Virus record (IMG/VR): IMGVR_UViG_3300033997_000092
Coordinates: 62,001-126,000 of that record
Direction: 5' to 3' (one strand)
DNA length: 64,000 nt
The notes beneath the pieces were generated by a model. That model made no database searches, was not told the origin of the DNA, and saw only the letters and a program-made list of their open reading frames with translations. Made by a program: the position numbers and the translations under genes. This document shows positions 1,227 through 28,492 of the stretch, in pieces (within the stretch, counting starts at the first letter, position 1; every line of letters begins with the position of its first letter).

Positions 1227-1697
1227 TCAGTAAGTTTCGATTGATTTGTAGAATTTTTCAAGTCCTTTTAGATTAGGAGAATATCCATGATCTCCGACCA
1301 TCTTGAAGAACTCTGCATTTTTCAAATCCTTCAAAGGATTGTTTTCGCGTAGCTCACCTTTGGGATGAATATAATCAGCGACGAACGTATCCCAATCGAC
1401 ACCATACGACCGCATTTCTTGAGCAAATATAAAGAACTTTTGCCATTGAGCTTGATCGTCTCCGTTCAGGTCAGTCAACGAATAGTGTTGAATGTCTGAA
1501 TCGGATAGTGGTTTAGGATAAACTACGATGCCGAACCTGTAGCGACTCTCAGGAAGTTTCCTTGTTATCGATTCAGGTATATCAGCAGGAGCTATAAAAC
1601 GTGAGTGACCTTTCGGCTGCGTTCCTAAGCTGAAGGGACGCAAACGCATCCCATACAGGTATTCTTTAGCTTTAGCAATACTGACTAATACGCGCAT
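1227..1697 (-). CDS. DarA C-terminal-like domain protein with leader variant
   Basis: YGMRLRPFSLGTQPKG...YRFGIVVYPKPLS...YSL resembles the DarA_C (defence against restriction A) signature; N-terminus MRVLVSIA. Confidence 0.65.
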   Translation of the reverse strand: MRVLVSIAKAKEYLYGMRLRPFSLGTQPKGHSRFIAPADIPESITRKLPESRYRFGIVVYPKPLSDSDIQHYSLTDLNGDDQAQWQKFFIFAQEMRSYGVDWDTFVADYIHPKGELRENNPLKDLKNAEFFKMVGDHGYSPNLKGLEKFYKSIETY

Positions 1698-2452
1698 TAG
1701 ATTTTATTCGCTATAGTCTTTTTGCGGGCTTTAGAGGCAGCAGCGTCTTTGATTGCTGTTTTAGGATCTGCCTTCAATGCAGCTCTGGCTTTACCTGCTT
1801 CACGTAACTTTTTACTGAAAGCCTTCAACGTACCGAAATTGATTTTAACTGCTTTACCCATAATAGAGCGCATCAGTTTAATCAAACTGTTTTTATGTTT
1901 GATAGGAACTTCTTTACCTGCTATCATTGCTTTCAGAGTATCTTTATCTTGTTTCGTTGCTTCAGGTGCTGCTTTATCTTCAGCAGCAGCTTTGGCGGCT
2001 TTCCCAGGCTTTGTCAAAATAGATGACTTAGAAGGAACTGCCTTAACTGTAACATCGGAGAGCTTCAGTTTTTTATCAGCAGGTAGTGAAAGCTTTTTGA
2101 ATTTAATGGCATCAACAATACCTTTGCGTTCGCCGACAAGTGCAGCAATTGCCTCAGCTATCTCACGGGCCTTCTCATTGTACTGGGCACGTGTGAATTT
2201 AGGTCCGATTTTCTCACGGAGTTTTTGTTTCATAGCAACCAGTTTGGCTTGCTTTTTGATAGTGTCGTTGTATGCTTTAAGTGCCGCAGCAACAACGGCT
2301 TTAGTTTTTGCGTCGGCTTGAGCTTGAACACGTGGATGTACTTTGCGTTTCGCTTTAGGCTTGATACCGCCTTTAACCATACCACTACGCATCTTAGTTT
2401 TTTGTGCTTTTGACGGTCCTGCACTCTCACTAACAAATACTTTGATTTTCAT
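1697..2452 (-). CDS. Lys/Ala-rich basic protein with MKIKVFVSESA leader (putative internal head protein)
   Basis: 251 aa, AAAGGAG RBS, very basic composition, shared leader. Confidence 0.7.
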   Translation of the reverse strand: MKIKVFVSESAGPSKAQKTKMRSGMVKGGIKPKAKRKVHPRVQAQADAKTKAVVAAALKAYNDTIKKQAKLVAMKQKLREKIGPKFTRAQYNEKAREIAEAIAALVGERKGIVDAIKFKKLSLPADKKLKLSDVTVKAVPSKSSILTKPGKAAKAAAEDKAAPEATKQDKDTLKAMIAGKEVPIKHKNSLIKLMRSIMGKAVKINFGTLKAFSKKLREAGKARAALKADPKTAIKDAAASKARKKTIANKI

Positions 2453-2476
2453 ACGAAAACTCCTTTAATATGTAGA

Positions 2477-2770
2477 TTATTTCTTGTTTGGTAAAAGGCG
2501 TAGTAATGAACGTACAGCCTCAAGCTCTGCCTTAACTGCTTGTAATTTTTTACCTTTAGGTTTTTCTTCTTCGAGAATATCGAGTAATTCATTTTCTCGG
2601 TCACTTAGCCGTACGAATCCTTTTCCTTCAAGAGAAGGGAATTTGGATAGTATAACTGCTTTCATTGATGCTTTGCGACGTTTCAACATTTCAGCATTAG
2701 TTAATGGCTTAGCTGCTATAGTTGGTTTTTTCGGAGCAGAACTTTCACTCACAAATATTTTGATTTTCAT
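2477..2770 (-). CDS. Small basic protein with MKIKIFVSESSA leader
   Basis: 97 aa, GGAG RBS, shared leader. Confidence 0.7.
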   Translation of the reverse strand: MKIKIFVSESSAPKKPTIAAKPLTNAEMLKRRKASMKAVILSKFPSLEGKGFVRLSDRENELLDILEEEKPKGKKLQAVKAELEAVRSLLRLLPNKK

Positions 2771-2783
2771 GTTATGCTCCAGT

Positions 2784-3215
2784 TCAACTAAATTTAAGAA
2801 TGTTGTTTATGTGTTCTTCGTAATTGCTGATGCCAACAATTACAAATTCTTCCAATGCGAACGCAGCTTCAGCGAAAGTTTTTACAGGTATTTCTTTGAC
2901 GAATTTCCTGTCTTCGACCAGATACGCTTTTTTGGTATCACTAATGTAAACAATAGCATTCAAAGGATAGACTATATTACCAACAAGAGATTTACCGATG
3001 TAGTATGTTCCTATGACTACTGCTTTACTTCTAATGCCTTTATTAGGACCATCAATTTGAGCCGGGTATTTATGTGCCGCAGTTACTTTGGTTGTAAATT
3101 CGTTTTTAGTATCTAGTGCTTTATCAATAGCAAACTTACGGACCATTTGCATAGCAAGTTGTATTCCTGTCTTTGAAGAACTGGAACTCTCACTCACGAA
3201 TACTTTGATTTTCAT
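2784..3215 (-). CDS. Hypothetical protein with MKIKVFVSESSS leader
   Basis: 143 aa, AGGAG RBS, shared leader. Confidence 0.7.
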   Translation of the reverse strand: MKIKVFVSESSSSSKTGIQLAMQMVRKFAIDKALDTKNEFTTKVTAAHKYPAQIDGPNKGIRSKAVVIGTYYIGKSLVGNIVYPLNAIVYISDTKKAYLVEDRKFVKEIPVKTFAEAAFALEEFVIVGISNYEEHINNILKFS

Positions 3216-3223
3216 GCAAACTC

Positions 3224-3952
3224 CTAGTCTAAATTGATAGTTGATTTAATATCAGGGTGCCAACCTTCACGACGAACCATAGCTACAGCATTTACTTCCG
3301 GGTGCCATGCGTATTCGCCTATGTCACCTGTGGTAGGATCGACGTTGTCCCACCGCAGCACTACTTGGTTACCATTAGCCTGTTTACGTACTATGTCTGC
3401 ACTGTACCTTCCAGGATTAATCTTCATCGCAGTCTTTATAGACATAGGGACTTCGATTGTCCTGACATACATTGAAGTGTTCTTACCTATAAGCATCCTT
3501 TCATGTATATAAGGTGAGCTTTCAACATAGATACGAATTGCGTAGTCCGATGCTTGATCTTTCTTGCTTAACAGCAGTTTAAAGATAGTGGCATGTGCTC
3601 CTGCTGTTTTAGGATTAAATACACGTACACCATGTTCGTTCTTACGCAAGTTCTCGACCAGCTTAGCTACGATCTTAGGCATATAGGCAGGTACACTGTG
3701 TTTTTCCACTATACGATTGTACATGGTTTCAGATACCGTGAAGCGCCAAGGAGAAGTTCCAAATAAAACAACAACACCGTATCCTTTATCATCGTTAGCT
3801 AATAAGAATGTGGAACCCTTAGATATTCCATGTACGTGTACGCTGTCTTCGATAGGAATTAGGCGTACTGCTTTGCGGAACATTAAACCGTCAAACTCGT
3901 CCGATTTACGTAATTGGACGGCGCTCTCGCTTACAAACACTTTGATTTTCAT
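3224..3952 (-). CDS. Hypothetical protein with MKIKVFVSESA leader
   Basis: 242 aa, AAGGA RBS, shared leader. Confidence 0.7.
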   Translation of the reverse strand: MKIKVFVSESAVQLRKSDEFDGLMFRKAVRLIPIEDSVHVHGISKGSTFLLANDDKGYGVVVLFGTSPWRFTVSETMYNRIVEKHSVPAYMPKIVAKLVENLRKNEHGVRVFNPKTAGAHATIFKLLLSKKDQASDYAIRIYVESSPYIHERMLIGKNTSMYVRTIEVPMSIKTAMKINPGRYSADIVRKQANGNQVVLRWDNVDPTTGDIGEYAWHPEVNAVAMVRREGWHPDIKSTINLD

Positions 3953-3962
3953 ACAAGGTTCC

Positions 3963-5018
3963 TTATTTATTCGAGGGCTTACCGTTCTTCAAATAGTTAT
4001 TCTGGAAATACTCTTGAGCTATTTCCCATCCAAGAGGAGTAACGAGTCCACGCGCAGACGTGCCGTGCACCATATACTCACAAAGAACCGCCCACGCTTC
4101 TGACGACCACGGATTGCTATATCCTGGATGTTCAAACTGGTCAGGATGCAATTCTTTATTCTCAGAATACATACGCTTGAATTTTGTTACGTCAGTTTGT
4201 TTGACAATACCTGAGTACCACATATAGTGGGCAAGTTCGTGTGTTATAGCCTGTGCCACAATCTTTGTATCTAACACACCGCCGTTAATCTGAGTAAGTT
4301 GTCCACGATTGATAATCAGGAACGACTTACTACGCATCTGGTTAGCTTGCGTTATAATACTGATCATCGTAGCATAGTCAAAACTTTCAGCTAAATACAA
4401 ACGACTTCCTTTATAAGGAACGATTGATCCAGTATGCTTTAGTGCCTCAGTTACCATATCGAGAATGTCTGGCTGTATCGGATAGATAAGGGCCGTCTTA
4501 CCTGACTTAGATCTGAATCTAGTCGGATTCGGCAGCATCTGTATTGGAATCGGAACGGACGTTTTTCCTACGATAGGGCGATTGTTAATCTTCTTTGGTA
4601 CAGATAGCTTCAATCTTTCACTTGGCGCATTGGCAGGTATTACTGATTTAGGCATAACAGGCAGCGCTGGACTATCTGCTTTATTATCCGGTGTAGCCTC
4701 AGACAACGATTCTTGTTTGATTCGTTCTGTTGTCAGTGTAGGAAGCGTCGGCATATTTGTCATAGGACGTGATTTTGCCAGAATAGATTGCAGTACATCT
4801 TCCTTTATAGGAGTAGGCACTAACTGTCCATCGAGACCTAGACAGAATGCTTTGGCCTTATACAAGGCATAGTAGATTTGTCGTGGATTAAGAGTTACTT
4901 GCCCTACTTTGATAGGCGCAGAGTCTAAATATCTGAAATAAAACATGGTTAAAGCTTCCAGAGTGTATTTGCTATAAATTACTGTTCTGTAGGCAATGGA
5001 AATGAAAACGGCTGACAA
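3963..5018 (-). CDS. Zincin-like metallopeptidase domain protein
   Basis: C-terminal ITHELAHYMW (HExxH) with downstream SEAWA third-ligand motif; Pro-rich linker; N-terminus MSAVFISIA. Confidence 0.7.
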   Translation of the reverse strand: MSAVFISIAYRTVIYSKYTLEALTMFYFRYLDSAPIKVGQVTLNPRQIYYALYKAKAFCLGLDGQLVPTPIKEDVLQSILAKSRPMTNMPTLPTLTTERIKQESLSEATPDNKADSPALPVMPKSVIPANAPSERLKLSVPKKINNRPIVGKTSVPIPIQMLPNPTRFRSKSGKTALIYPIQPDILDMVTEALKHTGSIVPYKGSRLYLAESFDYATMISIITQANQMRSKSFLIINRGQLTQINGGVLDTKIVAQAITHELAHYMWYSGIVKQTDVTKFKRMYSENKELHPDQFEHPGYSNPWSSEAWAVLCEYMVHGTSARGLVTPLGWEIAQEYFQNNYLKNGKPSNK

Positions 5019-5036
5019 AATGCCAGCCGAATCATA

Positions 5037-5933
5037 TTATGCACGTTTGGCTTTAGCAAAAGCCGATGCGTCACTTGGACTGAGTGAAACGTAAGTGTCG
5101 CCCAGTTTGACAATAACTGTAGAGCCGCCCATAACACCTTGAGCTTTAACAACTGCTTTTTCGCCAAGTGTATCAGTGAACCATTTAGCGGCGCTGTCCA
5201 GGGCTGCTTCACGGGAAGCTTTTTGGGCATCCTGAATACCGGAAATGATTTTCTGCTGGGCTGCAATAGATTTGATGTGCTGTTTGATAGCAGATTCGGC
5301 AACCATCATTTCTTTTTCAACGGCAGCCGGTAATACGCCTTTGGCATACACAGGCAGCAACAGGCGAACAGTAGCGCTAAGCTTAGAACGTAATGCAATT
5401 TTAACTGCACGACGAGCTAAGTAAGTAGTGCTTTGGCCTTTCTTGCCTGCTTGTTTTGAAGCATCAAAGTCAACAACCTTTGACTTGGCGGAAACAACAT
5501 AATACTTTTCAGGCTGAGGTTTAAGTGAGCTTGATACCAACGATGTAACTTGTTTGATAATCGCCGAAGCTGCTTTACCTACACCGTTTACAACAACAGT
5601 GATAACCAAAGTCTTTAAGTCAGGGCCAGTTTTGCGTTTCTTCGCTGTAACAGTAGGTTTAGCAGAAGCTATACCTTCAATAGCAGTGATAGCTTTGGCA
5701 ACAACACGGCCTTCTTTCAAACCTAAACCAGGAACTGTATAAACCAATTGGGTAGAAGTTTTAGCTGGCTTGACTTTTGGTTCGTGTGTAAAATCCGACG
5801 CAGCTTTTTCTATCTTTTTGGACAAAGCAGCCAGAGCAGTTTGATTAACGAAGCCGTCCTTTGCAACAACTGACGCACTCGTTGAAACCAAAGCGCCTTG
5901 CAATGGGTCCAAAGCTAATGTCACTTTCATCAT
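5037..5933 (-). CDS. Lys/Ala-rich basic protein, putative internal head protein
   Basis: Start moved to ATGATG at 5933/5930 (AGGGG RBS); MMKVTLALDPLQGALVSTSA extended leader. Confidence 0.7.
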   Translation of the reverse strand: MMKVTLALDPLQGALVSTSASVVAKDGFVNQTALAALSKKIEKAASDFTHEPKVKPAKTSTQLVYTVPGLGLKEGRVVAKAITAIEGIASAKPTVTAKKRKTGPDLKTLVITVVVNGVGKAASAIIKQVTSLVSSSLKPQPEKYYVVSAKSKVVDFDASKQAGKKGQSTTYLARRAVKIALRSKLSATVRLLLPVYAKGVLPAAVEKEMMVAESAIKQHIKSIAAQQKIISGIQDAQKASREAALDSAAKWFTDTLGEKAVVKAQGVMGGSTVIVKLGDTYVSLSPSDASAFAKAKRA

Positions 5934-5946
5934 TATTCCCCTAAGT

Positions 5947-5976
5947 AGAGAAGGGTGAGACTGATGTATCTCACCC
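5947..5976 (-). terminator. Hairpin, possible intrinsic terminator
   Basis: GGGTGAGA-8nt-TCTCACCC followed by TTCTCT (imperfect U tract). Confidence 0.5.
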
Positions 5977-5983
5977 AAACAGT

Positions 5984-6040
5984 TTAATTACCACCACCGC
6001 CACCAACACGGCAACGGCGACTATCATATACACCAGGCAT
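5984..6040 (-). CDS. Micro-ORF, 18 aa MPGVYDSRRCRVGGGGGN
   Basis: AGGAG RBS 6 nt before ATG at 6040; TAA at 5984-5986; hairpin directly downstream. Below the ORF-track size cut-off. Confidence 0.5.
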   Translation of the reverse strand: MPGVYDSRRCRVGGGGGN

Positions 6041-6135
6041 AGCCAACTCCTATAGTTGCAGTTGAATCGTTACGCTATGTAACGGAGCCCAACGCTCTCC
6101 TACAGTCTTTAACGTGGCGTAGTGTCCACGAGATA

Positions 6136-6148
6136 TGGATCACCTCCT
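6136..6148 (-). promoter_or_regulatory. Extended Shine-Dalgarno AGGAGGTGATCCA (13-nt complement of 16S rRNA 3' end)
   Basis: Plus strand TGGATCACCTCCT equals the conserved 16S 3' terminus; no ATG at normal spacing. Confidence 0.7.
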
Positions 6149-6170
6149 ACCTTGTGGAAAATTCAACAGA

Positions 6171-6947
6171 TTAGCTGTACTTCTTTTCAGCTTCTTTACT
6201 GACGAAGAACCAAGCTTTACCTTTAATCGATTGTTTGGTAATCGGATTTGTCGAAGCAAACGTCATAACGCGAGTTTTCTTTTTACCTTCAACAGCGTAA
6301 ATACTTCCAGATGACGTCAATTGAGGACGGACATTACGCGCTGCTTTCAACGAAGGCTTGACTGTCTTTTCTTCACCTGCACGTAAAGGCTTGGTGACTT
6401 CAACTGAGAAATAAATGCCTTTCTCCGCAAGCTGCATTTCTTTAGCTTTAGTTGATTGTTTTGCCGTGATAGCAGCCTGCTTATTAAGCTTACTTTGTAA
6501 AGCTTCGCGTTTAGATTGCAGCTCCGCTATTTGAGCATCAAGATCGCGGATAGATTTTCTCACATTTACGTCTTGTGCTTTTTCACCAACAGCATCACCA
6601 AAGCGTATAGCGCGTGAAGGCTTACCGTCGGTTGTTTTTGGAATAGGAGCAGCTAAGAGTTTCGCAAGCTGTGTCGGCGTAAACTTAGCTTCTTTTTTAG
6701 ATCCGACAGTTGTTTTCTCACCGCGCTGCATAACATAGGCCCACTCGGTAGAAACTGACTTAATCGAACCTGATTTAGTCAGCTCGACATCAGTTATAGT
6801 GTGTTGTATTTTACTTTTGTAGAATGGTGAGCCGCGTTTAATAAGTTGGCCTACCTTATGCTCAATTAGTTTTGCACCTATCACAATTTTCTTTGTTTGC
6901 GCAGGAGTAAACCCGGCCGATTCGCTGATCATGACATTGATTTTCAT
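6171..6947 (-). CDS. Basic protein with MKINVMISESA leader and central coiled coil
   Basis: 258 aa, AAGGA RBS, leader variant. Confidence 0.7.
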   Translation of the reverse strand: MKINVMISESAGFTPAQTKKIVIGAKLIEHKVGQLIKRGSPFYKSKIQHTITDVELTKSGSIKSVSTEWAYVMQRGEKTTVGSKKEAKFTPTQLAKLLAAPIPKTTDGKPSRAIRFGDAVGEKAQDVNVRKSIRDLDAQIAELQSKREALQSKLNKQAAITAKQSTKAKEMQLAEKGIYFSVEVTKPLRAGEEKTVKPSLKAARNVRPQLTSSGSIYAVEGKKKTRVMTFASTNPITKQSIKGKAWFFVSKEAEKKYS

Positions 6948-6963
6948 TGTTAATCCTTAAAGT

Positions 6964-7572
6964 TTATTTCAATGCAGCACTTTTAGTACCTTTTGCCGAT
7001 TTCAATGAAGCCTTCTCGCCAGTCAACAATTTCAGCAAAGCACTGGCAGACATATCCATCAATTCACGTTTACGTGATTTCGGCAAACGCTCGATAACAA
7101 CCTTCTTCAACTTACCTGCAGAAGTTACTTCGATTGAATCGATAGCATATTCATTTTTTATAAGCTGCGGAGTGGATTTATTATCTGATTTACGGACATA
7201 AGCCGACGTCATTGTGATGATAAGCTTTGTTGATTTATCCTGGAGCTTTTTACGTTGAACAGGAGTAAAGCGATCATCGGTCAATTCTGTCTTGCTAGAA
7301 CGTGCGGATTTGGATGGTTTAGATCCAGAAGAACCACGAATACCTGCTTTACGCACTAAGGTAAGTGTAACTGACATTCCTACAGTTGTCTCGCCTAATG
7401 CGCTAGTAAGTTGAGGATAATCAGTTACCTTAACATCGAACTTATCAATGTCATAGGCATCTGAATTCTTCTCAACAAGACCAGATAAAGCTTTTACGGC
7501 CTTAGCCTCAATATCTTTGTGGAGTTGGCGCTGGCCGGCAGCAGAATTTAAAGAAACTAAAACTTTCATCAC
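6964..7572 (-). CDS. Basic protein with MKVLVSLNSA leader variant
   Basis: 202 aa; C-terminal half resembles the N-terminal domain of 6171..6947. Confidence 0.7.
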   Translation of the reverse strand: MMKVLVSLNSAAGQRQLHKDIEAKAVKALSGLVEKNSDAYDIDKFDVKVTDYPQLTSALGETTVGMSVTLTLVRKAGIRGSSGSKPSKSARSSKTELTDDRFTPVQRKKLQDKSTKLIITMTSAYVRKSDNKSTPQLIKNEYAIDSIEVTSAGKLKKVVIERLPKSRKRELMDMSASALLKLLTGEKASLKSAKGTKSAALK

Positions 7573-8367
7573 CTACCTCGCCTTCATTATTTGGGAATGT
7601 AAGTGTTGGTTACTTACATAAGCTGGATTGTCCACATGGCTACACTCAAAGCCAGTCGCATCATGGCAACGGCGATACACTAACAAGTCCTGCAACGAGT
7701 AAGGGCGTTTACCCAGTCGAGTATGCTGACAGAAGTGTAATGTATCTTGGGTAGTCACATGGCCACAGAAGCTACAGGTGTATGAAGTGTAATAGAAGCC
7801 AACACTGTGAGTATTCACTTTGTCGGTCAGAATTTCATTACACAGTTTGCTGTCACGCGAACGGTCGTAACCAAGTAACATCATAAGCTTAGCATGTTTA
7901 CCATGAAATCCAGGAAGAGCTTTAACATAACTGTCAAAGATAATACCTTTTGCTTTGGTATAGTCTTTGTTGTCATGTTCTTTGTGTGTAGGTTTGCCTT
8001 TGAATGTTTTATACATCGGCATACCATAACGCGGTTTGAAATCTAGTAATTCCCGCACACTCAAGCTATCGCCGTTTGTGTTAGGAATGTCTGTTATCAG
8101 TGCTGGAACAGGAACCAATATGTAGTCACGTATATCAGGACTGATGTTGTACTTCTCAGCCGCAGAAGGAAGCCATGCGTTAATATCAAGCACGACTCCT
8201 TCACCACCGCCGACCATACTCGGTTTGACCTGAATCTCTTTTGAAGTACGAGAGAACTGGTTTAGCTCTACAGCTTTACCTTCTCCGGCACTACGGTCAT
8301 AAAAACTGCTGATGTCAAATGCAGGAGCAAACAAATCACCATCAGCACTACGAGGAAAGTTCTGCAT
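7573..8367 (-). CDS. Putative prohead maturation protease (HK97/assemblin-like fold, Cys/His insertion)
   Basis: PNTNGDS...TFKGKPTHKEH...GIIFD...SVG....CSFCG..CQH...FECSHVDNPA follows the H...SxG...ExSxVxxPA pattern of HK97-type prohead proteases. Confidence 0.7.
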   Translation of the reverse strand: MQNFPRSADGDLFAPAFDISSFYDRSAGEGKAVELNQFSRTSKEIQVKPSMVGGGEGVVLDINAWLPSAAEKYNISPDIRDYILVPVPALITDIPNTNGDSLSVRELLDFKPRYGMPMYKTFKGKPTHKEHDNKDYTKAKGIIFDSYVKALPGFHGKHAKLMMLLGYDRSRDSKLCNEILTDKVNTHSVGFYYTSYTCSFCGHVTTQDTLHFCQHTRLGKRPYSLQDLLVYRRCHDATGFECSHVDNPAYVSNQHLHSQIMKAR

Positions 8368-8369
8368 AA

Positions 8370-8876
8370 TTAGTCCGCCGTTAAATATACCTGACGTTCA
8401 GTAAGGCGCTGACGCTCTGTACGTAAACGGTTGTTAGGAGTATGGTAATTGCCATCAGTGTCTTGTATAAGAGCACCAATATCACGACCACGATATGACT
8501 GCGGGAAGTTATCACGTAAAGCGCACAGGAAATTGTAGAAGCGCTCCACTTCCGACTTCTTCTTGCCTATCCGTGCAAGGAAACGGACTTCAGGCTGCAG
8601 GTTCTCTAACAGCGTGACGATTGCCTGGTAGATATATTGGTGCTGCTGTTCATCAGGACGAGTAACGAAGCGCTCTACAGCAACTTTAAGGTAGTTTACG
8701 TCATTGTTTAAACGGCCAAACACCGTAGACCGTACGTTGTTATTGTATGCACCCGTAGTAGCAAGAATGTCCATGCACTGCTGCACACGCTGGCTTACCA
8801 AGTCCGCAAGCTGAGAATAAGGCATCACTGCGTCCTCAGTCACTACACGTGGATTGATTGTTATTTGGCATTTCAT
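8370..8876 (-). CDS. Hypothetical helical protein
   Basis: 168 aa, tightly packed between neighbours. Confidence 0.65.
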   Translation of the reverse strand: MKCQITINPRVVTEDAVMPYSQLADLVSQRVQQCMDILATTGAYNNNVRSTVFGRLNNDVNYLKVAVERFVTRPDEQQHQYIYQAIVTLLENLQPEVRFLARIGKKKSEVERFYNFLCALRDNFPQSYRGRDIGALIQDTDGNYHTPNNRLRTERQRLTERQVYLTAD

Positions 8877-10204
8877 AAGAATTTCTTCTCCACATTAGCC
8901 CGTACCCAAGAACAACATTCATTGAAAGTCATAGGGACAGGATGTATTAATTGGACACCAGATTCACGAACTAACGTGTATGGCTGATTTTCTATTCTAC
9001 CACTGTGGAAAGCAGATTCATCGAAACCATCACGCAGCAATATATGCCAAGCACGACGATTGAATCCGCCTTTATTGCCGTTAGTGTCAAGTGTGCCGAT
9101 AATACGGTCATTAAAACGTATATCGTATCTTGTACGCTGTGCAAGAGGCAGACGAGCCATAGTTGAATTTACTTTGAATGACAGGCGAGGTCTAACAGCG
9201 GATTCAGACACCATTTCATCTGATTCAACATCGTCACTTTCTTCGTCACCAGTTTCTTCTTCGTTTTCTTGTTGAGCAGCAGCAAGCACTTCATCCAAAT
9301 CTTCTTGGCTGTACTGAGAAGTATCTGGCTTCCAGCCTTCTTCTTGCATTTGATAGATTGCTTGGAAACGAGCAACACGCTCTGCAATGCCATCAAGGTC
9401 TTGGTTACCTGCCCACAAAACGAATTCATCAAGCATAACACTGACTGGGTCATTTTCAGTATCGTTAGATTCTGATACCATGTCGGGATCTGCTACTTCA
9501 TCCAACTGTCCAGTGCCTTCAAGGGCCTCTGAAGGATTTTTGTAACCGAAGAACGCTCCGGCTAACGCACCAGCAACAGGAGCAAGTCCAGCAGCAACAG
9601 CTCCGACAGCAGCAGTACCAAGAAGCGTTTTAGTTGCATAGAAGGTTATCTTGTGTGCCAGATACTTACCACGCTGGTGTTCTTCTGTTACACGGTCTTC
9701 TTTCTTAGCATCGATATAATTGCCTAAAGCTTTTATGTTCTCTGGGCTAAGGCGCTGGCTGATATATTCAGTGGCACCACGTATATTATTTGCTAAAGCT
9801 AAAACGCCTTTGGCCAGACGGCTCTTGACATCAGGCAGCATAGATTCTGCGCGACGGTCTTCTTCCTTTCTGGCCAGCTTTTCATTTATTACTGCAATGA
9901 GGCCGCCGGATATAGGCAAGCCTCCAGTTGACTTACGTTGAATCTTTTTGTCGCGTTTATCCAGAGGAACCTTGTCACGATATTGTTTATTCAGGTCCTC
10001 AAAAGAAACACTCTTGCCTGAACCTGACGGCTTATCGTCATCTTCTTCAGGCTCACCAGAAGCTCCTGGAGGCTTTTGGTAAAGCTTCATCCTAGAGCGT
10101 TTATGTCGCGCTAAGTATGCTTGTTGCTCTTTATACGATTTGCGTCTCCACCACGCAGGAACATCTTCTTGCGATAAGGAGACAAGATCAAGAGTTATTC
10201 GCAT
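8873..10204 (-). CDS. Multi-segment protein with leader, Gly/Ala hydrophobic hairpin and acidic tracts
   Basis: Start moved to ATG 10204 (MRITLDLVSLSQ); contains LLGTAAVGAVAAGLAPVAGALAGAFFG and two internal MVSES motifs. Confidence 0.7.
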   Translation of the reverse strand: MRITLDLVSLSQEDVPAWWRRKSYKEQQAYLARHKRSRMKLYQKPPGASGEPEEDDDKPSGSGKSVSFEDLNKQYRDKVPLDKRDKKIQRKSTGGLPISGGLIAVINEKLARKEEDRRAESMLPDVKSRLAKGVLALANNIRGATEYISQRLSPENIKALGNYIDAKKEDRVTEEHQRGKYLAHKITFYATKTLLGTAAVGAVAAGLAPVAGALAGAFFGYKNPSEALEGTGQLDEVADPDMVSESNDTENDPVSVMLDEFVLWAGNQDLDGIAERVARFQAIYQMQEEGWKPDTSQYSQEDLDEVLAAAQQENEEETGDEESDDVESDEMVSESAVRPRLSFKVNSTMARLPLAQRTRYDIRFNDRIIGTLDTNGNKGGFNRRAWHILLRDGFDESAFHSGRIENQPYTLVRESGVQLIHPVPMTFNECCSWVRANVEKKFL

Positions 10205-11318: not shown

Positions 11319-11324
11319 AACTTG

Positions 11325-12254
11325 TTATCCTATTAATATTTTACCTGAGCGTTGCCAGTTGATACCAAAATGGTTTTGAACACGGATTGTTTGACGTTCA
11401 ACATACGAACGGTCAATGTAGCTGTAATATTCGGTGCGTTTAATACGTGGATAGTTGAAATACTCTATCCACAATTCAGGGAACTTGCCTGTTGGAATAT
11501 AAGGAGCGTTTGTACGTTCATCGATACCAACAAGATGTTTGTCATTACGGAATGTACGAGCAGGCAATGTTCTACCGTTGTCGATATAGCTGACGCTGGT
11601 GTAATAAATATATGCCCGTGTCTCATGCAACAGCCGTGTTTTCTGAACAATGTAAGGAACGCCGTCGCGCATTTCCAGTTCAGGACCACGCGTGTACCAC
11701 TTGAATACTTGATAACGTCCATTAACGTAACCAGGAGCATTCGGTATCATGCGTATTGTCATGCTGCTATAGTAGTTGCTATCACGACCAGGATAATACA
11801 CATCCCTTGTAGGAGAGTATATCTTCCATTCAGGTAAAAACGGCTGCTGTATGTTAACAAGCACTTTGCCGTAGTTGGACTTCTGAGTACCGTTAGAAAA
11901 CTGATAGTTGAAACAGTCTTGCTCTGTTGTTCTATCTACGTTTGGAGTGTACACGAAACCATTCTTGTACGTTGATAGTCCAACTATGCCTTTGCGGCCA
12001 GGTATTGCTAGAATAGGATCTAGCAGCCATCCACGCTGTACAGGCATACGGGCAGGAACTATAGTTGGGTCAGGGCTAGTATGATCGGGTACTGCATCTG
12101 GGTCATGGTCGTAATCGTAACGAGCGCCTTGACGCCAATGTTCAACAACAGGTATTTCTACCTTTTGTCCTACAATAACATTGACTTCAAGGTCAGGTGC
12201 GAAGGGTACATGATGACGCCAGTAGTCAGTAGCAATTACATGACTTCCGTACAT
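11325..12254 (-). CDS. Putative virion protein with Ig/cadherin-like N-terminal domain
   Basis: GFVYTPN...DCFNYQFSNG...GKVLVNI is typical of Ig-like (Big_9-type) domains. Confidence 0.5.
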   Translation of the reverse strand: MYGSHVIATDYWRHHVPFAPDLEVNVIVGQKVEIPVVEHWRQGARYDYDHDPDAVPDHTSPDPTIVPARMPVQRGWLLDPILAIPGRKGIVGLSTYKNGFVYTPNVDRTTEQDCFNYQFSNGTQKSNYGKVLVNIQQPFLPEWKIYSPTRDVYYPGRDSNYYSSMTIRMIPNAPGYVNGRYQVFKWYTRGPELEMRDGVPYIVQKTRLLHETRAYIYYTSVSYIDNGRTLPARTFRNDKHLVGIDERTNAPYIPTGKFPELWIEYFNYPRIKRTEYYSYIDRSYVERQTIRVQNHFGINWQRSGKILIG

Positions 12255-12733
12255 TAAGCGCCTCCTAAACGTGCCTCTAACAGTTTGTGCAGTGCTTCAA
12301 GGAATGGACGCTGCTGCTTAGGAAGACGTTTCATAGCACGTTTGTAATCGAACCACATACGTTCACGCCACTGTTCTGGGAATTCCATATGTACTTCATC
12401 AACACGCATGGCATACACTGTGACTTTTTGAGCCACACCAGTAAAGCCTTTACGGTAGTTGTAGCTGCCCAGCTTGATACTGGCTTTACCTTTAAGTCCG
12501 GCTTCTTCCCAGGCTTCAACTAAGGCACTCTGCTTCTTGCTCATGCCTTTTTCTTTCTTGCCTTTTGGAATACCCCACTTACCACTGTGACTGCTGCCAA
12601 TCAACATATACATGATATGGCCATCTTCAATGCGATAAGGTATCACACCTGTTTGCTTACGCACACGTTCCATCGGGTCAATTTCAACTGCGGAAGTTGA
12701 TTCCAATGTCTTCAAATTTAATACAAGTTTCAT
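12254..12733 (-). CDS. Nudix hydrolase with N-terminal leader-like extension
   Basis: GVIPY, WGIPKG, variant Nudix box GKKEKGMSKKQSALVEAWEEAGL, FPE..RER.W; N-terminus MKLVLNLKTLESTSA. Confidence 0.9.
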   Translation of the reverse strand: MKLVLNLKTLESTSAVEIDPMERVRKQTGVIPYRIEDGHIMYMLIGSSHSGKWGIPKGKKEKGMSKKQSALVEAWEEAGLKGKASIKLGSYNYRKGFTGVAQKVTVYAMRVDEVHMEFPEQWRERMWFDYKRAMKRLPKQQRPFLEALHKLLEARLGGA

Positions 12734-12735
12734 AA

Positions 12736-14691: not shown

Positions 14692-14720
14692 CGCTTCTTT
14701 TCCAAAGGGTTCTTTAATAC

Positions 14721-14730
14721 TGATTTACAG
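14721..14730 (-). promoter_or_regulatory. Putative phage promoter CTGTAAAT
   Basis: 31 nt upstream of the ligase ATG; motif recurs before three other replication genes. Confidence 0.55.
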
Positions 14731-14734
14731 TGTC

Positions 14735-16480
14735 CTAGCTCACAATAGGATCGGAGGACCGTTTAAACTTAACTACGTCAGCCTGTACGTCTTTGAATTC
14801 CTTAGGAGTAAGTTTCCTGACGATCTTAACAGAGTCAACAAACTTAGCTTTCTTAGTCGTATCAATGCGTACAGTGTGGTACTCGCTAGGTTCATTGGTC
14901 AAGTCATAGACTTTGTACACGGTGACGTTGTTGTTTGCTGGAAGTGGATAGATGTCAAGGACCACGAACTCACGTTGCTCTGTGGTATCTTTGTTGAAGA
15001 CAACCACATCACCTTCCTCTGCTTCTGCTGATTCTTCTTCCTCTTCAGGTTCTTCCTCAACATCAGCATCCTCTAAATCCGCGCCGTCTTCATCGTCCTC
15101 GTCTGAGTCTTCGTCGCCGGCATCTTCTTCATCCGTGTCAGTATCTTCTTCAGATTCTTCATCCTGTTCGTCCGTGTCCTCGTCGGCGCTTTCTTCTTCC
15201 TCTTCCTCAGAGTCGTCAGATTCTTCGTCATCGTATTCCAATTCAGATTCATCTACTTCTTCCTCTTCTTCATCGGAAGCATCGTCCTCTAAATCTTTGA
15301 GGTTAGCCTTACGGGCTTCAGCGCGTTTCTTGTCGATAACTTGATCTAACAAGGACAATGGGTCAACTTCACCATCAGATAAACTGTCCACAGCTGGATC
15401 AAATTGGAATTGTTCAGTAGGACCGGATTGCTCCTGTGGAGTGTCCAAATCAAGGTCTGTATCAAGGGCATCGTCATCAAATTCCACTACTTCTGGAACA
15501 TCACGTTTCAGTTTCTTTTGTTGTTCTTCTTTTTGAGCCTTTAACAGCTCTTTGAGTTTTTCGTCTGTCATAACAATCGGAGTAGATCGGCGCTTGGATT
15601 CCTTGATTGCATAGGCAGCGGCCGATTCTTTTAAACGCTGTTTTTCGTCCAAGCGCTTCTTACGAGCTTCGGCACGGGCCTGTTTAGCAAGTTCGCGTTC
15701 TTTCTCCTGTTGTTTTTCTTTTGCTTCACGATCTTTAGCCGCAGCTATTTCACGTGCCTGACGTCGTTCAGATACGGCCTCACGGTGATTCTGCTTTTTG
15801 TTATTGCGGCGAATCTGTTTGAGTTCTTCGACAGTAAACTTACCTGTAGGCCATTTGGTCTTAGGTAAGACTTCTGTGTTCTCAAGCATCGGGCCCCAAG
15901 TATCAGGATTTATTACCCAACGGCGGCCTTCAGTATCCATATAAATGCCGCCCTTTGTAGGAGCAACATAACGGACACCGAACACATCTCCACGATTAAT
16001 AACGTGGAACAAATCGCGTGTTTTGCCTATCTTCAAAGGCTTGCTGCCAGTGTATTTACGCCACTGATAGTTTGCTAAATCCACACCTTTAGTGCTTTCG
16101 TCGTATAGCTTACGTGCTGGTTTGAAGTAATCAGAGTCCCACGCACGGCGCTCAACAAGTTTAGTTCCTTGTAAGTTTCTTGGAGCACGTTGTCTGCCTT
16201 CACGGACATTAACCAGTTTAGGCTTTTTGATCTCGTCACTGCGAGAAGTCAGGAATTCCATTTCCTCAGGTTCAATTGTGAAATTGACATGATACAGGTC
16301 AGGCAGTATGACGTAAAAACGACCGCCTTTGATAGGCCGAATACCGTACACACTACCATTACTGATCTCAGCAGCAGATCCGTGGGTTACCAACTTACGT
16401 TTGGTACGTCCACTGTACTGATACCAGCTAAACTTATCCAATTCTTCAAATTTGGCTGATAACGCCACGAATCTAAGCAT
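14735..16480 (-). CDS. Protein with two N-terminal repeats, charged coiled coil and long D/E tract
   Basis: 581 aa, AGGAG RBS, MLRFVALSA leader variant; repeated Y.G...I..G.V.G.R unit. Confidence 0.75.
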   Translation of the reverse strand: MLRFVALSAKFEELDKFSWYQYSGRTKRKLVTHGSAAEISNGSVYGIRPIKGGRFYVILPDLYHVNFTIEPEEMEFLTSRSDEIKKPKLVNVREGRQRAPRNLQGTKLVERRAWDSDYFKPARKLYDESTKGVDLANYQWRKYTGSKPLKIGKTRDLFHVINRGDVFGVRYVAPTKGGIYMDTEGRRWVINPDTWGPMLENTEVLPKTKWPTGKFTVEELKQIRRNNKKQNHREAVSERRQAREIAAAKDREAKEKQQEKERELAKQARAEARKKRLDEKQRLKESAAAYAIKESKRRSTPIVMTDEKLKELLKAQKEEQQKKLKRDVPEVVEFDDDALDTDLDLDTPQEQSGPTEQFQFDPAVDSLSDGEVDPLSLLDQVIDKKRAEARKANLKDLEDDASDEEEEEVDESELEYDDEESDDSEEEEEESADEDTDEQDEESEEDTDTDEEDAGDEDSDEDDEDGADLEDADVEEEPEEEEESAEAEEGDVVVFNKDTTEQREFVVLDIYPLPANNNVTVYKVYDLTNEPSEYHTVRIDTTKKAKFVDSVKIVRKLTPKEFKDVQADVVKFKRSSDPIVS

Positions 16481-22143: not shown

Positions 22144-22151
22144 TTCCTCTA

Positions 22152-28489: not shown

Positions 28490-28492
28490 CTG

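What the first reader, a model, noticed from the sequence alone, without database searches (positions are those of the whole stretch)
1227..16480. Candidate capsid-targeting leader + protease + cargo system: about 12 unrelated proteins share an N-terminal tag ending in [S/A]-x-[S/A]
Seen: otherwise unrelated ORFs begin MKIKVFVSESA (2452), MKIKIFVSESS (2770), MKIKVFVSESS (3215), MKIKVFVSESA (3952), MKINVMISESA (6947), MRVLVSIA (1697), MSAVFISIA (5018), MKVTLALDPLQGALVSTSA (5930), MKVLVSLNSA (7569), MRITLDLVSLS (10204), MKLVLNLKTLESTSA (12733) and MLRFVALSA (16480). The pattern is an alternating hydrophobic beta-strand followed by [S/A]-x-[S/A]. These genes flank a prohead-protease-like gene, and the replication proteins in the window lack the tag. 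Known: T4 internal proteins IPI/II/III carry a 10-aa capsid-targeting sequence removed by gp21. Inference: this is an independent, portable packaging tag that loads a varied payload (basic DNA binders, DarA_C, metallopeptidase, Nudix) into the head for co-injection. It could be usable for protein delivery.
Basis: partly seen in the sequence, partly recalled or inferred. Interest (0 to 1): 0.88.

Follow-up and report, generated by a model that had tools for sequence, protein, structure and literature searches.

The report
Head-protein leader tag in jumbo phage
In an uncultured 261-kb jumbo phage, about a dozen unrelated proteins encoded next to the head-maturation protease begin with the same short peptide ending in Ser-x-Ser/Ala, which is most likely a clipped-off propeptide marking proteins loaded into the phage head, as phage T4 does with a different tag.

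Summary
Eleven of the twelve quoted N-termini stand. The twelfth (TTG 5018, MSAVFISIA) is an intrinsic terminator read in frame; that gene starts at ATG 4946.

The leaders are selected as peptide, not as DNA. The proteins behind them are unrelated to each other. The leaders are confined to the head-gene neighbourhood (8/17 genes vs 0/38 elsewhere, p=2e-5).

The window belongs to the 'Lupandier' jumbo-phage group (PaBG, Lu11, NCTB, Dickeya and Erwinia jumbo phages). Relatives with only 43-77% protease identity carry the same kind of leader, often on non-homologous cassette genes.

The motif hydrophobic-[S/A]-x-[S/A] also sits at three canonical protease-substrate positions:
- the end of the major head protein's propeptide (…LSxS|TGE(I/V)NA);
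- many places in the acidic scaffold-like protein;
- just before the protease's own conserved core.

The protease models confidently as an HK97-gp4-type prohead serine protease.

Best reading: this is a functional analogue of the T4 capsid-targeting-sequence/internal-protein system, unrelated in sequence and with Ser/Ala instead of Glu at P1. It loads a hypervariable, mostly basic payload (DarA_C, KMPT-N, Nudix and others). Cleavage, targeting and ejection are inferred, not shown. I found no earlier description for this clade.

The parts
7573..8367 (-). Prohead (head-maturation) serine protease, 264 aa. A putative N-terminal self-processing site ...FAPA|FDISS lies at about residue 16.
   Evidence: phrog_18299 'head maturation protease', E 1.4e-86. 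AlphaFold2 with 94 homologs gives pLDDT 89 and pTM 0.85. Foldseek against BFVD matches prohead serine proteases, COG3740, XkdF and DUF2213 at E 1e-7 to 1e-4. Invariant residues are H131, S188, S243 and a CxxC..CxH insert. [SA]-x-[SA]|FD is conserved in relatives.
6964..7569 (-). Cargo protein, 201 aa, basic, with leader MKVLVSLNS|A (a weaker fit to the motif).
   Evidence: The L006 ortholog (54% identity) has the leader MKIKVFVSQS|S. Net charge +17.
6171..6947 (-). Cargo protein, 258 aa, basic, with leader MKINVMISES|A.
   Evidence: Orthologs keep a leader whose sequence has drifted: L041 MEILVSTS|AEFTPAQ and L006 MKIQVMLSES|A.
5037..5930 (-). Cargo protein, 297 aa, basic, with a long leader MKVTLALDPLQGALVSTS|A.
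   Evidence: No homolog in the loci of nine relatives.
5009..5029 (-). Intrinsic terminator inside the cassette. This is the source of the false leader 'MSAVFISIA'.
   Evidence: L041 has the equivalent terminator followed by a stop codon and an AGGAGG.
3963..4946 (-). HExxH metallopeptidase-like cassette protein (327 aa from ATG 4946) with NO N-terminal leader in this phage.
   Evidence: phrog_37079. The HELAH motif is visible in the translation. Orthologs start at the equivalent Met in L041, L006 and the Dickeya-type loci, while NCTB, L008 and L009 have an MK(I/V)(D/N)VL.. extension.
3224..3952 (-). Cargo protein, 242 aa, with leader MKIKVFVSES|A.
2784..3215 (-). Cargo protein, 143 aa, with leader MKIKVFVSES|S.
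   Evidence: No homolog in the relatives' loci.
2477..2770 (-). Cargo protein, 97 aa, basic, with leader MKIKIFVSES|S.
   Evidence: No homolog in the relatives' loci.
1697..2452 (-). Cargo protein, 251 aa, very basic (26% K+R, net +44), with leader MKIKVFVSES|A.
   Evidence: No homolog in the relatives' loci.
1227..1697 (-). DarA_C-domain cargo protein, 156 aa, with leader MRVLVSIA|K.
   Evidence: Pfam DarA_C, E 2.8e-12. phrog_1926 'released from the phage upon host infection'. Orthologs in NCTB, L008 and L009 have MLISIS|, MKLLISLS| and MEIFISLS| in register.
1..1061 (-). N-terminal 353 aa of a 700-aa acidic scaffold-like protein (annotated 'ATPase' in relatives). It carries several motif sites (LLSES|S, LTSES|G, GELESES|S, ...). 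It continues beyond the window in L004 17307-19409, where it is followed by a virion protein and the major head protein.
   Evidence: The orthologs in every relative that was scanned carry 6-20 Phi-x-S-x-S sites.
8873..10204 (-). Acidic 443-aa head/core-type protein with leader MRITLDLVSLS|Q and two internal sites (DMVSES|N at about 246, EMVSES|A at about 335). The C-terminal domain matches phrog_31537.
   Evidence: Orthologs keep a site just before a conserved WW(K/R)K: NCTB ..ELVSLS|N, L006 ..LFVSES|A, L008 MTLISLS|A, L041 ..HLISES|A.
12254..12733 (-). Nudix hydrolase, 159 aa, with leader MKLVLNLKTLESTS|A.
   Evidence: Pfam NUDIX, E 6e-8, and phrog_10313, E 1e-31. The L041 ortholog (58% identity) has the leader MAKVTLSLS|A.
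14735..16480 (-). KMPT-N-domain protein, 581 aa, with a long acidic tail and leader MLRFVALS|A.
   Evidence: Pfam KMPT-N, E 8.6e-13. Orthologs: L006 ..LLSLS|AKYDELDDFSW, NCTB ..LLSIS|A, Alexandra MILSVS|A, JA29 MLSQS|A, PaBG gp217 MLMIAEA|K.
42919..48705 (-).
   Evidence: phrog_21391. The PaBG ortholog gp202 starts MGSLFTLNSLS|A and is virion band 1 in PMC7412058 Table 1. The NCTB ortholog starts MSNENSAANGLESLS|A.
48716..49231 (-). A 171-aa protein with a longer putative propeptide ending ...SPSMVSES|SES at about residue 43.
   Evidence: The syntenic NCTB protein has ...KLLRSES|ASADE at about residue 34.

Best explanation
The window comes from an uncultured Lupandier-group jumbo myovirus.

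Its prohead serine protease has an HK97-gp4-type fold. It most likely cuts after hydrophobic-[Ser/Ala]-x-[Ser/Ala], with P5 and P4 hydrophobic and P1' often Ala or Ser.

At least 11 proteins near the protease gene, plus two further upstream, are made with a 6-19-residue N-terminal propeptide. It typically reads M-K-(I/V)-x-(V/I/L)-x-(V/I/L)-S-x-S, has the alternating pattern of a beta-strand, and ends in that motif.

By analogy with the T4 capsid-targeting sequence, the leader would bring the protein into the assembling prohead core. The protease would then remove the leader when it also trims the major head protein, chops the acidic scaffold and trims itself.

The mature proteins are mostly basic. 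They would stay with the DNA in the head and probably enter the host on infection. They include a DarA_C protein, a KMPT-N protein, a Nudix hydrolase and several orphan basic proteins.

The stretch between the protease gene and the scaffold gene is a hypervariable cassette whose genes share only the leader.

Shown here: the motif, its enrichment and position, its conservation, peptide-level selection, its recurrence at canonical substrate positions, and the protease fold.

Inferred: the cleavage itself and the exact scissile bond (S-x-S| versus S-x-S-A|), the targeting role of the leader, and ejection into the host.
For: Enrichment and location:
- 8 of 17 genes in the region against 0 of 38 elsewhere in the window.
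- Phi-(x)-SES sites are almost confined to head and cargo proteins.

Selection on the peptide:
- The five MKIKVFVSES genes are alike only from the ATG for about 33 nt, with synonymous differences including AGT versus TCG serine codons, and with no shared upstream DNA.

Unrelated cargo:
- No similarity remains once the leaders are removed; most mature proteins have net charge +5 to +44.

Same motif in canonical substrates:
- The major head protein's propeptide ends ..L-S-x-S|TGE(I/V)NA in this phage and in nearly all of the relatives' major head proteins listed (18 in all). P2 varies (E/S/Q) while the serines stay fixed; NCTB (..ALSS|NGEINA) and L011 (..ALDGK|TGEFNA) depart from the pattern.
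- The scaffold-like acidic proteins have 6-20 sites each.
- The protease has [SA]-x-[SA]|FD before its core.

Conservation across the clade at 43-77% protease identity:
- Orthologs keep a leader whose sequence and length drift.
- Non-homologous cassette genes in L006, L008, L009, NCTB and L041 carry the same kind of leader.
- P5 was not imposed by the search pattern, yet it is F/L/I in 33 of 46 sites.

Hypervariable cassette:
- Four of the nine cassette proteins have no homolog in nine relatives' loci, yet they carry the leader.
- Cassette size ranges from 1 gene (Dickeya/Erwinia types) to 10 or more.

Protease identity.

Cargo types known elsewhere as virion-delivered: DarA_C, phrog_1926 and KMPT-N.

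Experimental support in a relative:
- PaBG gp83 (MLIKINLLEAVA|A, directly upstream of the scaffold-like gp82) and gp202 are virion proteins.
- The PaBG authors noted proteolytic processing of virion proteins (PMC7412058).

The known precedent for such a system is T4 (PMC3012670, PMC5694885).
Against: There is no proteomic or biochemical evidence for this phage, so neither cleavage nor encapsidation has been observed.

The core motif is short and degenerate, and occurs about once per 270 residues by chance. Individual weak cases could therefore be coincidental, for example 7569 VSLNS|A, 16480 VALS|A and 48705 LYSAS|S.

Some leaders in relatives are only 6 residues long (MLISIS|). That is short for an address signal, so targeting may need other parts of the protein.

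One cassette protein, the metallopeptidase-like 3963-4946, has no leader. The leader is therefore not obligatory for being encoded in the cassette.

Three of PaBG's 'unknown' virion proteins (gp191, gp261, gp263) show no leader.

The protease has no detectable sequence relationship to T4 gp21 and no PDB structural match. Its assignment rests on the PHROG label, synteny and similarity to predicted structures.
Confidence: 0.66

Rival explanations
1. The leader is only a cleavable propeptide, not an address. It would be a protease site that keeps the proteins inactive or unfolded until they are inside the prohead, or that simply marks them as substrates. Incorporation into the head would depend on other features, such as basic charge, binding to scaffold or DNA, or domains like KMPT-N.
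For: The only universally conserved part is the 4-5-residue cleavage motif. Some leaders are just 6 residues long. The leaderless metallopeptidase-like protein sits in the same cassette. Several PaBG virion proteins lack a leader. In SPN3US about 80% of head proteins are not cleaved at all (PMC10052503).
Against: A cleavage site placed 6-11 residues from the N-terminus removes too little to act as an inhibitory prodomain. Positions upstream of P4 are non-random: K/R at residue 2 in 54% of tagged against 23% of untagged proteins, and hydrophobic residues at positions 3, 5 and 7. In the closest known system, T4, exactly such a 10-residue cleaved leader is the targeting signal (PMC3012670, PMC5694885).
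Confidence: 0.22
2. The peptides are export signals. They would be short Sec-type signal peptides cut by host signal peptidase I, whose -3/-1 rule also prefers small residues (A-x-A or S-x-A). On this view the proteins are secreted or periplasmic, not packaged.
For: The layout is superficially similar: a basic N-terminus (MK..), a hydrophobic stretch, then small-x-small.
Against: The hydrophobic stretch is only 3-5 residues and the whole leader is usually 6-11 residues, far shorter than functional Sec signals (established knowledge; no predictor was run). The same motif occurs about 35 residues into the major head protein, repeatedly inside an acidic scaffold-like protein and inside the protease, none of which are exported. 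The cargo proteins are cytoplasmic or DNA-associated types such as Nudix, DarA_C and highly basic proteins.
Confidence: 0.02
3. The shared start is a nucleic-acid or genome-architecture feature: a translation-initiation enhancer, or a short homology used to swap cassettes by recombination. The encoded peptide would have no role.
For: The five identical leaders sit in adjacent genes of a hypervariable cassette. A-rich codons straight after the ATG are common in well-translated genes.
Against: Identity starts at the ATG and the codons differ synonymously, including AGT/AGC versus TCG for Ser. No upstream DNA is shared. Relatives keep the peptide pattern with quite different sequences. The exact DNA pattern occurs only in this lineage. 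This idea cannot explain why the motif also occurs in the major head protein, the scaffold and the protease.
Confidence: 0.03

Closest known systems
Phage T4 capsid-targeting sequence (CTS) on internal proteins IPI/II/III, Alt, gp67 and gp68, removed by the prohead protease gp21
   Same: A leader of about 10 residues is shared by otherwise unrelated, mostly basic, highly diverse proteins. It ends at the prohead protease's cleavage motif. The same motif is used in the major head protein and the scaffold. The cargo is anti-defence or host-takeover proteins delivered with the DNA (PMC3012670, PMC5694885).
   Different: There is no sequence relationship: T4's leader is MKTYQEFIAE-type (from my own knowledge) and is cut after L/I-x-Glu. 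Here the leader reads MK(I/V)x(V)x(V)-S-x-S and P1 is Ser or Ala. The protease is not detectably related to gp21 by sequence and looks HK97-gp4-like by fold. Most cargo genes here are clustered directly between the protease and scaffold genes. Function is untested here.
Giant phage phiKZ / 201phi2-1 / SPN3US head-protein propeptides, cut by S80-family proteases (gp175, gp245)
   Same: These are jumbo phages with many head-internal or ejection proteins processed at a short motif that has a small residue at P3 (S/A/G-x-E or A-x-E). SPN3US prefers Val at P4 and Ser at P1' (PMC10052503). Propeptides and scaffold-like regions carry multiple sites.
   Different: Those proteases all cut after Glu, and most of their propeptides are long (111-254 residues), with only two short ones (20 and 24 residues). 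Here P1 is Ser or Ala and most leaders are 6-19 residues. The phage lineage is different: the Lupandier group lies far from the phiKZ-like phages in the trees of PMC7412058.
[quoted passage not shown]
   Same: One cargo protein here has the DarA_C domain. In P1 the Dar proteins are head-internal and injected, and the first 30 residues of DarB suffice to target a reporter to the capsid (PMC9024508).
   Different: The P1 signal is not known to be a shared leader on many proteins. DarA's processing site is undefined in that paper. No shared leader-plus-cleavage-motif logic has been described there.
Polyvalent proteins of phages and conjugative elements (Iyer et al. 2017, cited in PMC7824862)
   Same: DarA_C and KMPT-N are domains characteristic of large multidomain proteins thought to be injected with the DNA.
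   Different: Here the domains sit on separate small proteins, each with its own leader, rather than being fused into one giant polypeptide.
HK97 gp4 / COG3740 (MEROPS S78-type) prohead serine proteases
   Same: Fold-level similarity of the confident model to many proteins annotated this way. A His...Ser pair is invariant in the same order. The gene sits upstream of the scaffold and major head protein genes.
   Different: No Pfam model hits this protein or any of the listed homologs from a family of 344. It carries an extra CxxC..CxH insert. In HK97-type systems the protease mainly digests the capsid protein's own scaffolding domain; a set of leader-tagged cargo proteins is not a described feature (my own knowledge).

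Membership tests
T4-type capsid-targeting-sequence / internal-protein system (functional class) | One short N-terminal leader shared by otherwise unrelated proteins | tested here: met
   There are 11 credible leaders. The mature parts show no similarity. Enrichment is p=2e-5.
T4-type capsid-targeting-sequence / internal-protein system (functional class) | The leader ends at the prohead protease's cleavage motif, which is also used in the major head protein and the scaffold | tested here: met
   The motif recurs at the end of the major head protein's propeptide, at many sites in the scaffold-like protein and at the protease's N-terminus, in this phage and its relatives. Cleavage itself is inferred.
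T4-type capsid-targeting-sequence / internal-protein system (functional class) | The leader is necessary and sufficient for encapsidation | not testable with these tools
   This needs leader-reporter fusions and leader deletions in a cultured relative.
T4-type capsid-targeting-sequence / internal-protein system (functional class) | The tagged proteins are present in virions in processed form and are ejected into the host | tested here: inconclusive
   There is only indirect evidence. PaBG gp83 and gp202 (leader-like N-termini) are virion bands, and processing was noted without sites being mapped (PMC7412058). Nothing is available for this phage.
T4 CTS/gp21 family (homology) | A leader homologous to the T4 CTS, cleavage at L/I-x-Glu, and a protease homologous to gp21 | tested here: not met
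   P1 is Ser or Ala, never Glu. hhalign of the protease profile against T4 gp21 gives probability 0.3%.
phiKZ/SPN3US S80 protease processing | Cleavage C-terminal to Glu at S/A/G-x-E | tested here: not met
   P3 is small, as in that family, but P1 is Ser or Ala. The literature motif is quoted from PMC10052503 and PMC5694885.
HK97-gp4 / COG3740-type prohead serine protease | The characteristic fold | tested here: met
   The model has pLDDT 89. BFVD matches to 'prohead serine protease', 'COG3740 phage head maturation protease', XkdF and DUF2213 proteins have E 1e-7 to 1e-4 and TMq 0.4-0.5. The comparison is with predicted structures only. No PDB match was found.
HK97-gp4 / COG3740-type prohead serine protease | Conserved catalytic His and Ser | tested here: inconclusive
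   H131 and S188 (also S243) are invariant in 94 sequences. I did not superpose them on a known active site.
HK97-gp4 / COG3740-type prohead serine protease | A match to the curated family profile (Pfam Peptidase_S78 or relatives) | tested here: not met
   Pfam gives no hit at E<=0.01. No Pfam domain is on record for any of the listed homologs, from a family of 344.
Sec-type signal peptide | An n-region, a hydrophobic core of roughly 7-15 residues and a c-region, usually 18 residues or more in total | tested here: not met
   Most leaders are 6-11 residues with 3-5 consecutive hydrophobic residues. This was judged by inspection; no predictor was available.
Lupandier group of jumbo phages (PaBG, Lu11, NCTB, Dickeya JA/AD, Erwinia Y3/Yoloswag/Alexandra) | Shared gene order and protein similarity around the head module; two tail-sheath genes | tested here: met
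   The best protease matches are NCTB, fHe-Yen9-02, JA29, AD1 and Alexandra. Synteny is conserved from the large protein, KMPT-N protein, ligase and glycosyltransferase through the protease to the scaffold-like and major head protein genes. The window holds several tail-sheath-family genes. The group is defined in PMC7412058.

The most novel reading that the evidence does not exclude
The leader is a minimal, self-sufficient beta-strand address of 6-11 residues that docks in the prohead protease's own substrate groove. The protease would then double as the cargo receptor.

The clade would use this cheap, easily acquired tag to recruit enzymes not previously known as virion cargo for co-injection. 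Candidates are a Nudix hydrolase, a protein of about 220 kDa from the helicase family, and in some relatives the NAD-dependent DNA ligase. The protease-to-scaffold cassette would act as a fast-evolving arsenal of injected anti-defence effectors.
Probability: 0.2. Interest if true: 0.75.

Novelty: new variant of a known kind. Interest (0 to 1): 0.55.

Why it matters
If correct, the head-internal and probably injected proteome of a whole jumbo-phage clade can be read directly from sequence, by looking for a short leader followed by Phi-[S/A]-x-[S/A]. The clade includes PaBG, Lu11, NCTB, the Dickeya and Erwinia jumbo phages and many uncultured relatives.

That would flag dozens of orphan basic proteins and some enzymes (DarA_C, KMPT-N, Nudix, a giant helicase-like protein, possibly a ligase) as candidates for early-acting anti-defence or takeover factors.

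It also points to a prohead protease specificity (Ser/Ala at P1) different from the Glu-specific proteases of T4 and the phiKZ-like phages.

It would add a third natural encapsidation tag, beside those of T4 and P1, that could be tried for loading proteins into phage heads.

The concept is established, so the gain is breadth and a concrete, testable motif rather than a new principle.

Tried and rejected
- Megablast of the region against deposited phages found nothing. The phage is known only from metagenomes: IMG/VR contig 3300033997_000092, 261 kb.
- A scan of all viral contigs for DNA encoding MKIKVFVSES found only this lineage. The exact leader is lineage-specific and only the pattern is shared.
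- Pfam has no model for the protease.
- A profile search of PDB sequences found nothing.
- AlphaFold2 with 8 sequences gave a poor model (pLDDT 55), and its Foldseek search was meaningless.
- hhalign against T4 gp21 was not significant.
- The good model (94 sequences) still matched nothing in the PDB. Only the viral predicted-structure library placed the fold.
- The TTG-5018 leader was rejected as a terminator artefact.
- The signal-peptide, DNA-repeat/translation-enhancer and chance explanations were considered and rejected; see the rival explanations.
- A very loose pattern, [LIVMFAT][SA].[SA], also hits four untagged genes elsewhere in the window. It is too permissive to use alone.
- I ran no read mapping, because it would not bear on proteolysis.

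Full report
WHAT IS THERE.
Every sizeable ORF in the window lies on the minus strand.

Read in the direction of transcription, the window holds:
- replication genes: DNA polymerase, clamp, helicases, SbcD;
- head-tail connector and tail-sheath genes;
- then, inside the finding's range: a 1447-aa protein, a KMPT-N-domain protein, an NAD-dependent ligase, a Nudix hydrolase, a conserved 309-aa protein, a GT2/TPR glycosyltransferase, an acidic 443-aa protein, a 168-aa protein and a head-maturation protease at 7573-8367;
- a cassette of nine small genes (7569 down to 1227);
- the start of an acidic 700-aa protein that runs off the window.

The window is part of a 261-kb IMG/VR contig. The fetched locus L004 extends 2.4 kb further. 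It shows that the acidic protein is followed by a 230-aa virion-type protein and then the major head protein.

CHECK OF THE OBSERVATION.
All twelve peptides are present. Eleven are credible starts.

The twelfth (TTG 5018, MSAVFISIA) is not a leader:
- The codons are the descending stem and T-tract of the strongest terminator-like hairpin on that strand (5029-5009).
- The ortholog in the nearest relative starts at the Met that corresponds to ATG 4946, preceded by a stop codon, the same kind of terminator and an AGGAGG.

The pattern is far from chance:
- Using [LIVMF]-S-x-[SA] ending at residues 5-22, 8 of 17 genes in the range score against 0 of 38 elsewhere (p=2e-5).
- Phi-(x)-SES occurs at 13 distinct sites in about 20,400 residues, 11 of them in the proteins discussed here.

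The proteins really are unrelated once the leader is removed (all BLASTP E>0.29). Most are strongly basic.

The five near-identical MKIKVFVSES leaders are alike at the DNA level only from the ATG for about 33 nt. Their codons differ synonymously (Ser AGT/AGC/TCG; Val GTA/GTG/GTT). So the peptide is what is conserved, not a DNA repeat, promoter or ribosome-binding site.

WHAT PHAGE THIS IS.
No deposited phage is close at the DNA level.

By protein similarity and gene order, the window belongs with NCTB, Yersinia fHe-Yen9-02, Dickeya JA29/AD1 and Erwinia Alexandra-like phages. This is the 'Lupandier group' of PaBG-like jumbo myoviruses defined in PMC7412058.

That paper reports that some PaBG virion proteins are proteolytically processed. 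It never mentions a protease, a cleavage motif or a leader. The Dickeya jumbo-phage paper has no virion proteomics. Further full-text searches found no description of such a motif for this clade.

THE MOTIF IS THE PROTEASE'S CLEAVAGE MOTIF (INFERRED).
Three canonical substrates of prohead proteases carry it at the expected places.

1. The major head protein. In this phage it begins with a 35-residue segment ending ...GMKALSSS, directly followed by TGEINA. Nearly all of the relatives' versions listed, PaBG included, end the segment in L-S-x-S just before an invariant TGE(I/V)NA. P2 varies (E, S, Q) while the two serines stay fixed. NCTB (..ALSS|NGEINA) and L011 (..ALDGK|TGEFNA) depart from this.

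2. The acidic protein of 640-700 aa between the cassette and the head protein, mis-annotated as 'ATPase' or 'ribosomal-like'. It has 6-20 Phi-x-S-x-S sites in every relative scanned. Here these include three GELESES|S repeats. That is what one expects of a scaffold that is chopped up.

3. The protease itself, which has [S/A]-x-[S/A] immediately before its invariant FD(I/L)S: APA|FD here, and SSS|, SKS|, SES| or SRS| elsewhere.

Aligning the DarA_C orthologs puts VSIA, ISIS and ISLS in register, so P1 can be Ser or Ala.

A profile of 46 sites shows:
- P5 is F/L/I in 33 of 46 sites, although the search pattern did not require it;
- P4 is V/I/L;
- P3 is S, less often A;
- P2 is variable, with E favoured;
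- P1 is S, less often A;
- P1' is most often A or S.

Whether the cut is S-x-S| or S-x-S-A| cannot be decided from sequence alone. The head-protein and protease sites favour S-x-S|.

THE PROTEASE.
- PHROGs calls it a head-maturation protease (E 1e-86).
- Pfam has no model for it or for any of the listed homologs, from a family of 344.
- It shows no significant similarity to T4 gp21 or to any PDB sequence.
- A first AlphaFold2 model from 8 sequences was poor.
- With 94 homologs the model is confident (pLDDT 89, pTM 0.85).
- That model matches no solved structure.
- In the viral predicted-structure library, after the clade's own members (PaBG, phiRSL1, Bacillus phage G gp19), it matches dozens of proteins annotated as prohead serine protease, COG3740 head-maturation protease, XkdF or DUF2213 (E 1e-7 to 1e-4).
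- H131, S188 and S243 are invariant, as is a CxxC...CxH insert.

I therefore treat it as an HK97-gp4-type prohead serine protease with an unusual insert.

THE LEADER ACROSS THE CLADE.
Thirty-three IMG/VR loci, NCTB, PaBG and a 251-kb NCBI contig (L041) were examined.

Leaders found in the closer relatives:
- L006 (62% protease identity): MKIKVFVSQS|S, MKIQVMLSES|A, MKIKVFISSS|N, MKVNILISES|A, MKIRVFISES|S, MIISLS|VSA and others.
- L041 (77%): MKSLS|A, MKIFISVA|, MKILVSTS|A, MEILVSTS|A, MKIFISVS|S.
- NCTB: MKVFLSES|, MKIISIS|A, MKIVSIS|A, MLISIS|.
- L008 and L009: similar sets.
- PaBG: mostly Ala (MLMIAEA|, MAAIKINLAEA|A, MLIKINLLEAVA|A, MQLLIAMASA|).

Orthologs keep a leader while its sequence and length drift:
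- Nudix: MKLVLNLKTLESTS|A here, MAKVTLSLS|A in L041.
- The 201-aa protein: MKVLVSLNS|A here, MKIKVFVSQS|S in L006.

Four of the nine cassette proteins here have no homolog in nine relatives' loci, yet they carry the leader. The cassette ranges from a single gene in the Dickeya and Erwinia phages to ten or more in L006. This is the signature of a portable tag on a fast-changing payload.

The 1928-aa helicase-family protein (42919-48705) begins MKTPQLYSAS|S. Its PaBG ortholog gp202 begins MGSLFTLNSLS|A, and the NCTB ortholog begins MSNENSAANGLESLS|A. gp202 is the largest band in the PaBG virion proteome.

The 171-aa protein just upstream (48716-49231) has ...SMVSES|SES about 43 residues in. Its NCTB counterpart has ...KLLRSES|A at about residue 34.

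PaBG gp83 is another virion band. It lies directly upstream of the scaffold-like gp82 and has a leader-like start.

These are the only experimental anchors, and they are indirect.

HOW IT MOST LIKELY WORKS.
The closest known system is T4. [quoted passage not shown]

The anatomy here matches point for point:
- a short shared leader;
- unrelated, basic cargo;
- the leader ending at the motif used in the head protein and the scaffold;
- cargo domains that are known elsewhere from virion-delivered proteins (DarA_C of the P1 Dar system, PMC9024508; KMPT-N of polyvalent proteins; phrog_1926).

It is not a member of the T4 family:
- the leader sequence is unrelated;
- P1 is Ser or Ala, whereas T4, phiKZ, 201phi2-1 and SPN3US all cut after Glu;
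- the protease is of a different sequence family.

The main open alternative is that the leader is only a cleavable propeptide and that entry into the head depends on something else. Export-signal, nucleic-acid-level and chance explanations do not fit the data.

VERDICT.
This is a real feature, well supported computationally. It is a new variant of a known kind of system, and I found no earlier description of it for this clade. One reader case is rejected and two or three cases are added. Function remains inferred. I give confidence 0.66 for the overall mechanism, with less confidence in the targeting role specifically.

Noticed in passing
window 42919-48705 (-); PaBG gp202 = L045 13541-19450; NCTB = L047 1432 onward: The 1928-aa helicase-family protein (phrog_21391) has a leader-like N-terminus in three relatives. 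Its PaBG ortholog is the largest virion protein band. A helicase-like protein of about 220 kDa packaged in the virion is unusual.
   Followed up: partly
L030 4604-6583; L011 4842-6863; L015 4535-6538; L009 3348-5369; L008 3031-5046; window 12736-14691: The NAD-dependent DNA ligase carries a leader-like N-terminus in several relatives (MKVQLSIS|A, MLTLNLSLS|S, ..KSES|ASISLKRL, MNYKLRISRA|K). It does not in this window, L041 or L006. This suggests either gain and loss of the tag on an enzyme or chance matches.
   Followed up: partly
window 7573-8367 (-), residues 198-215: The protease family has an invariant CxxC...CxH insert that looks like a zinc ribbon. It is not a usual feature of prohead proteases. 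No Pfam model covers the family, which has 344 homologs.
   Followed up: partly
L019 and other Dickeya/Erwinia-type loci, e.g. L015 19690-20358, L018 19761-20426, L003 21901-22572: A protein of about 222 aa encoded among the tail-tube genes starts MLFFVSVS|A, MLFFISTS|A or MLILLSES|A, followed by a CDWYRFEG motif resembling the KMPT-N proteins. It is a tagged gene located far from the protease.
   Followed up: no
window 5009-5029 (-); L041 11520-11560: An intrinsic terminator sits in the middle of the cargo cassette and is conserved in position in the closest relative. The cassette may therefore be split into two transcription units.
   Followed up: partly
window 24107-30159 (-): Three consecutive genes (1460, 333 and 221 aa) share the same N-terminal domain (phrog_13325, also scoring as phrog_24148 'HNH endonuclease'). 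They look like tandem paralogs of a tail protein's N-terminus.
   Followed up: no
window 20902-23291 and 30173-31822 (-): There are several tail-sheath-family genes: two adjacent phrog_12249 paralogs plus a phrog_23 sheath. This is consistent with the duplicated sheath genes reported for the Lupandier group.
   Followed up: no
L001 11947-12729 (NCTB); Yoloswag and JA33 records: The protease ortholog is annotated 'Phage endolysin' or 'putative endolysin' in several deposited genomes. The acidic scaffold-like protein is annotated 'ATPase' or '60S ribosomal-like protein L2-A'. These are probably mis-annotations.
   Followed up: partly
L041 (NCBI GCA_050043615.1, contig JBNHEI010000006.1, 251 kb): The closest relative (77% protease identity) sits in an NCBI genome assembly as a 251-kb contig, presumably a complete phage genome binned with or assembled alongside a bacterial genome. 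It could hint at the host.
   Followed up: no
window 3963-4946 (-) and its orthologs L001 15455, L008 13354, L009 11942: The HExxH metallopeptidase-like protein has no leader here, in L041 or in L006. It has an MK(I/V)(D/N)VL.. extension in NCTB, L008 and L009 that lacks a clear S-x-S. Its N-terminal (F/W)(Y/F)R(Y/H)LG motif resembles the KMPT-N region.
   Followed up: partly
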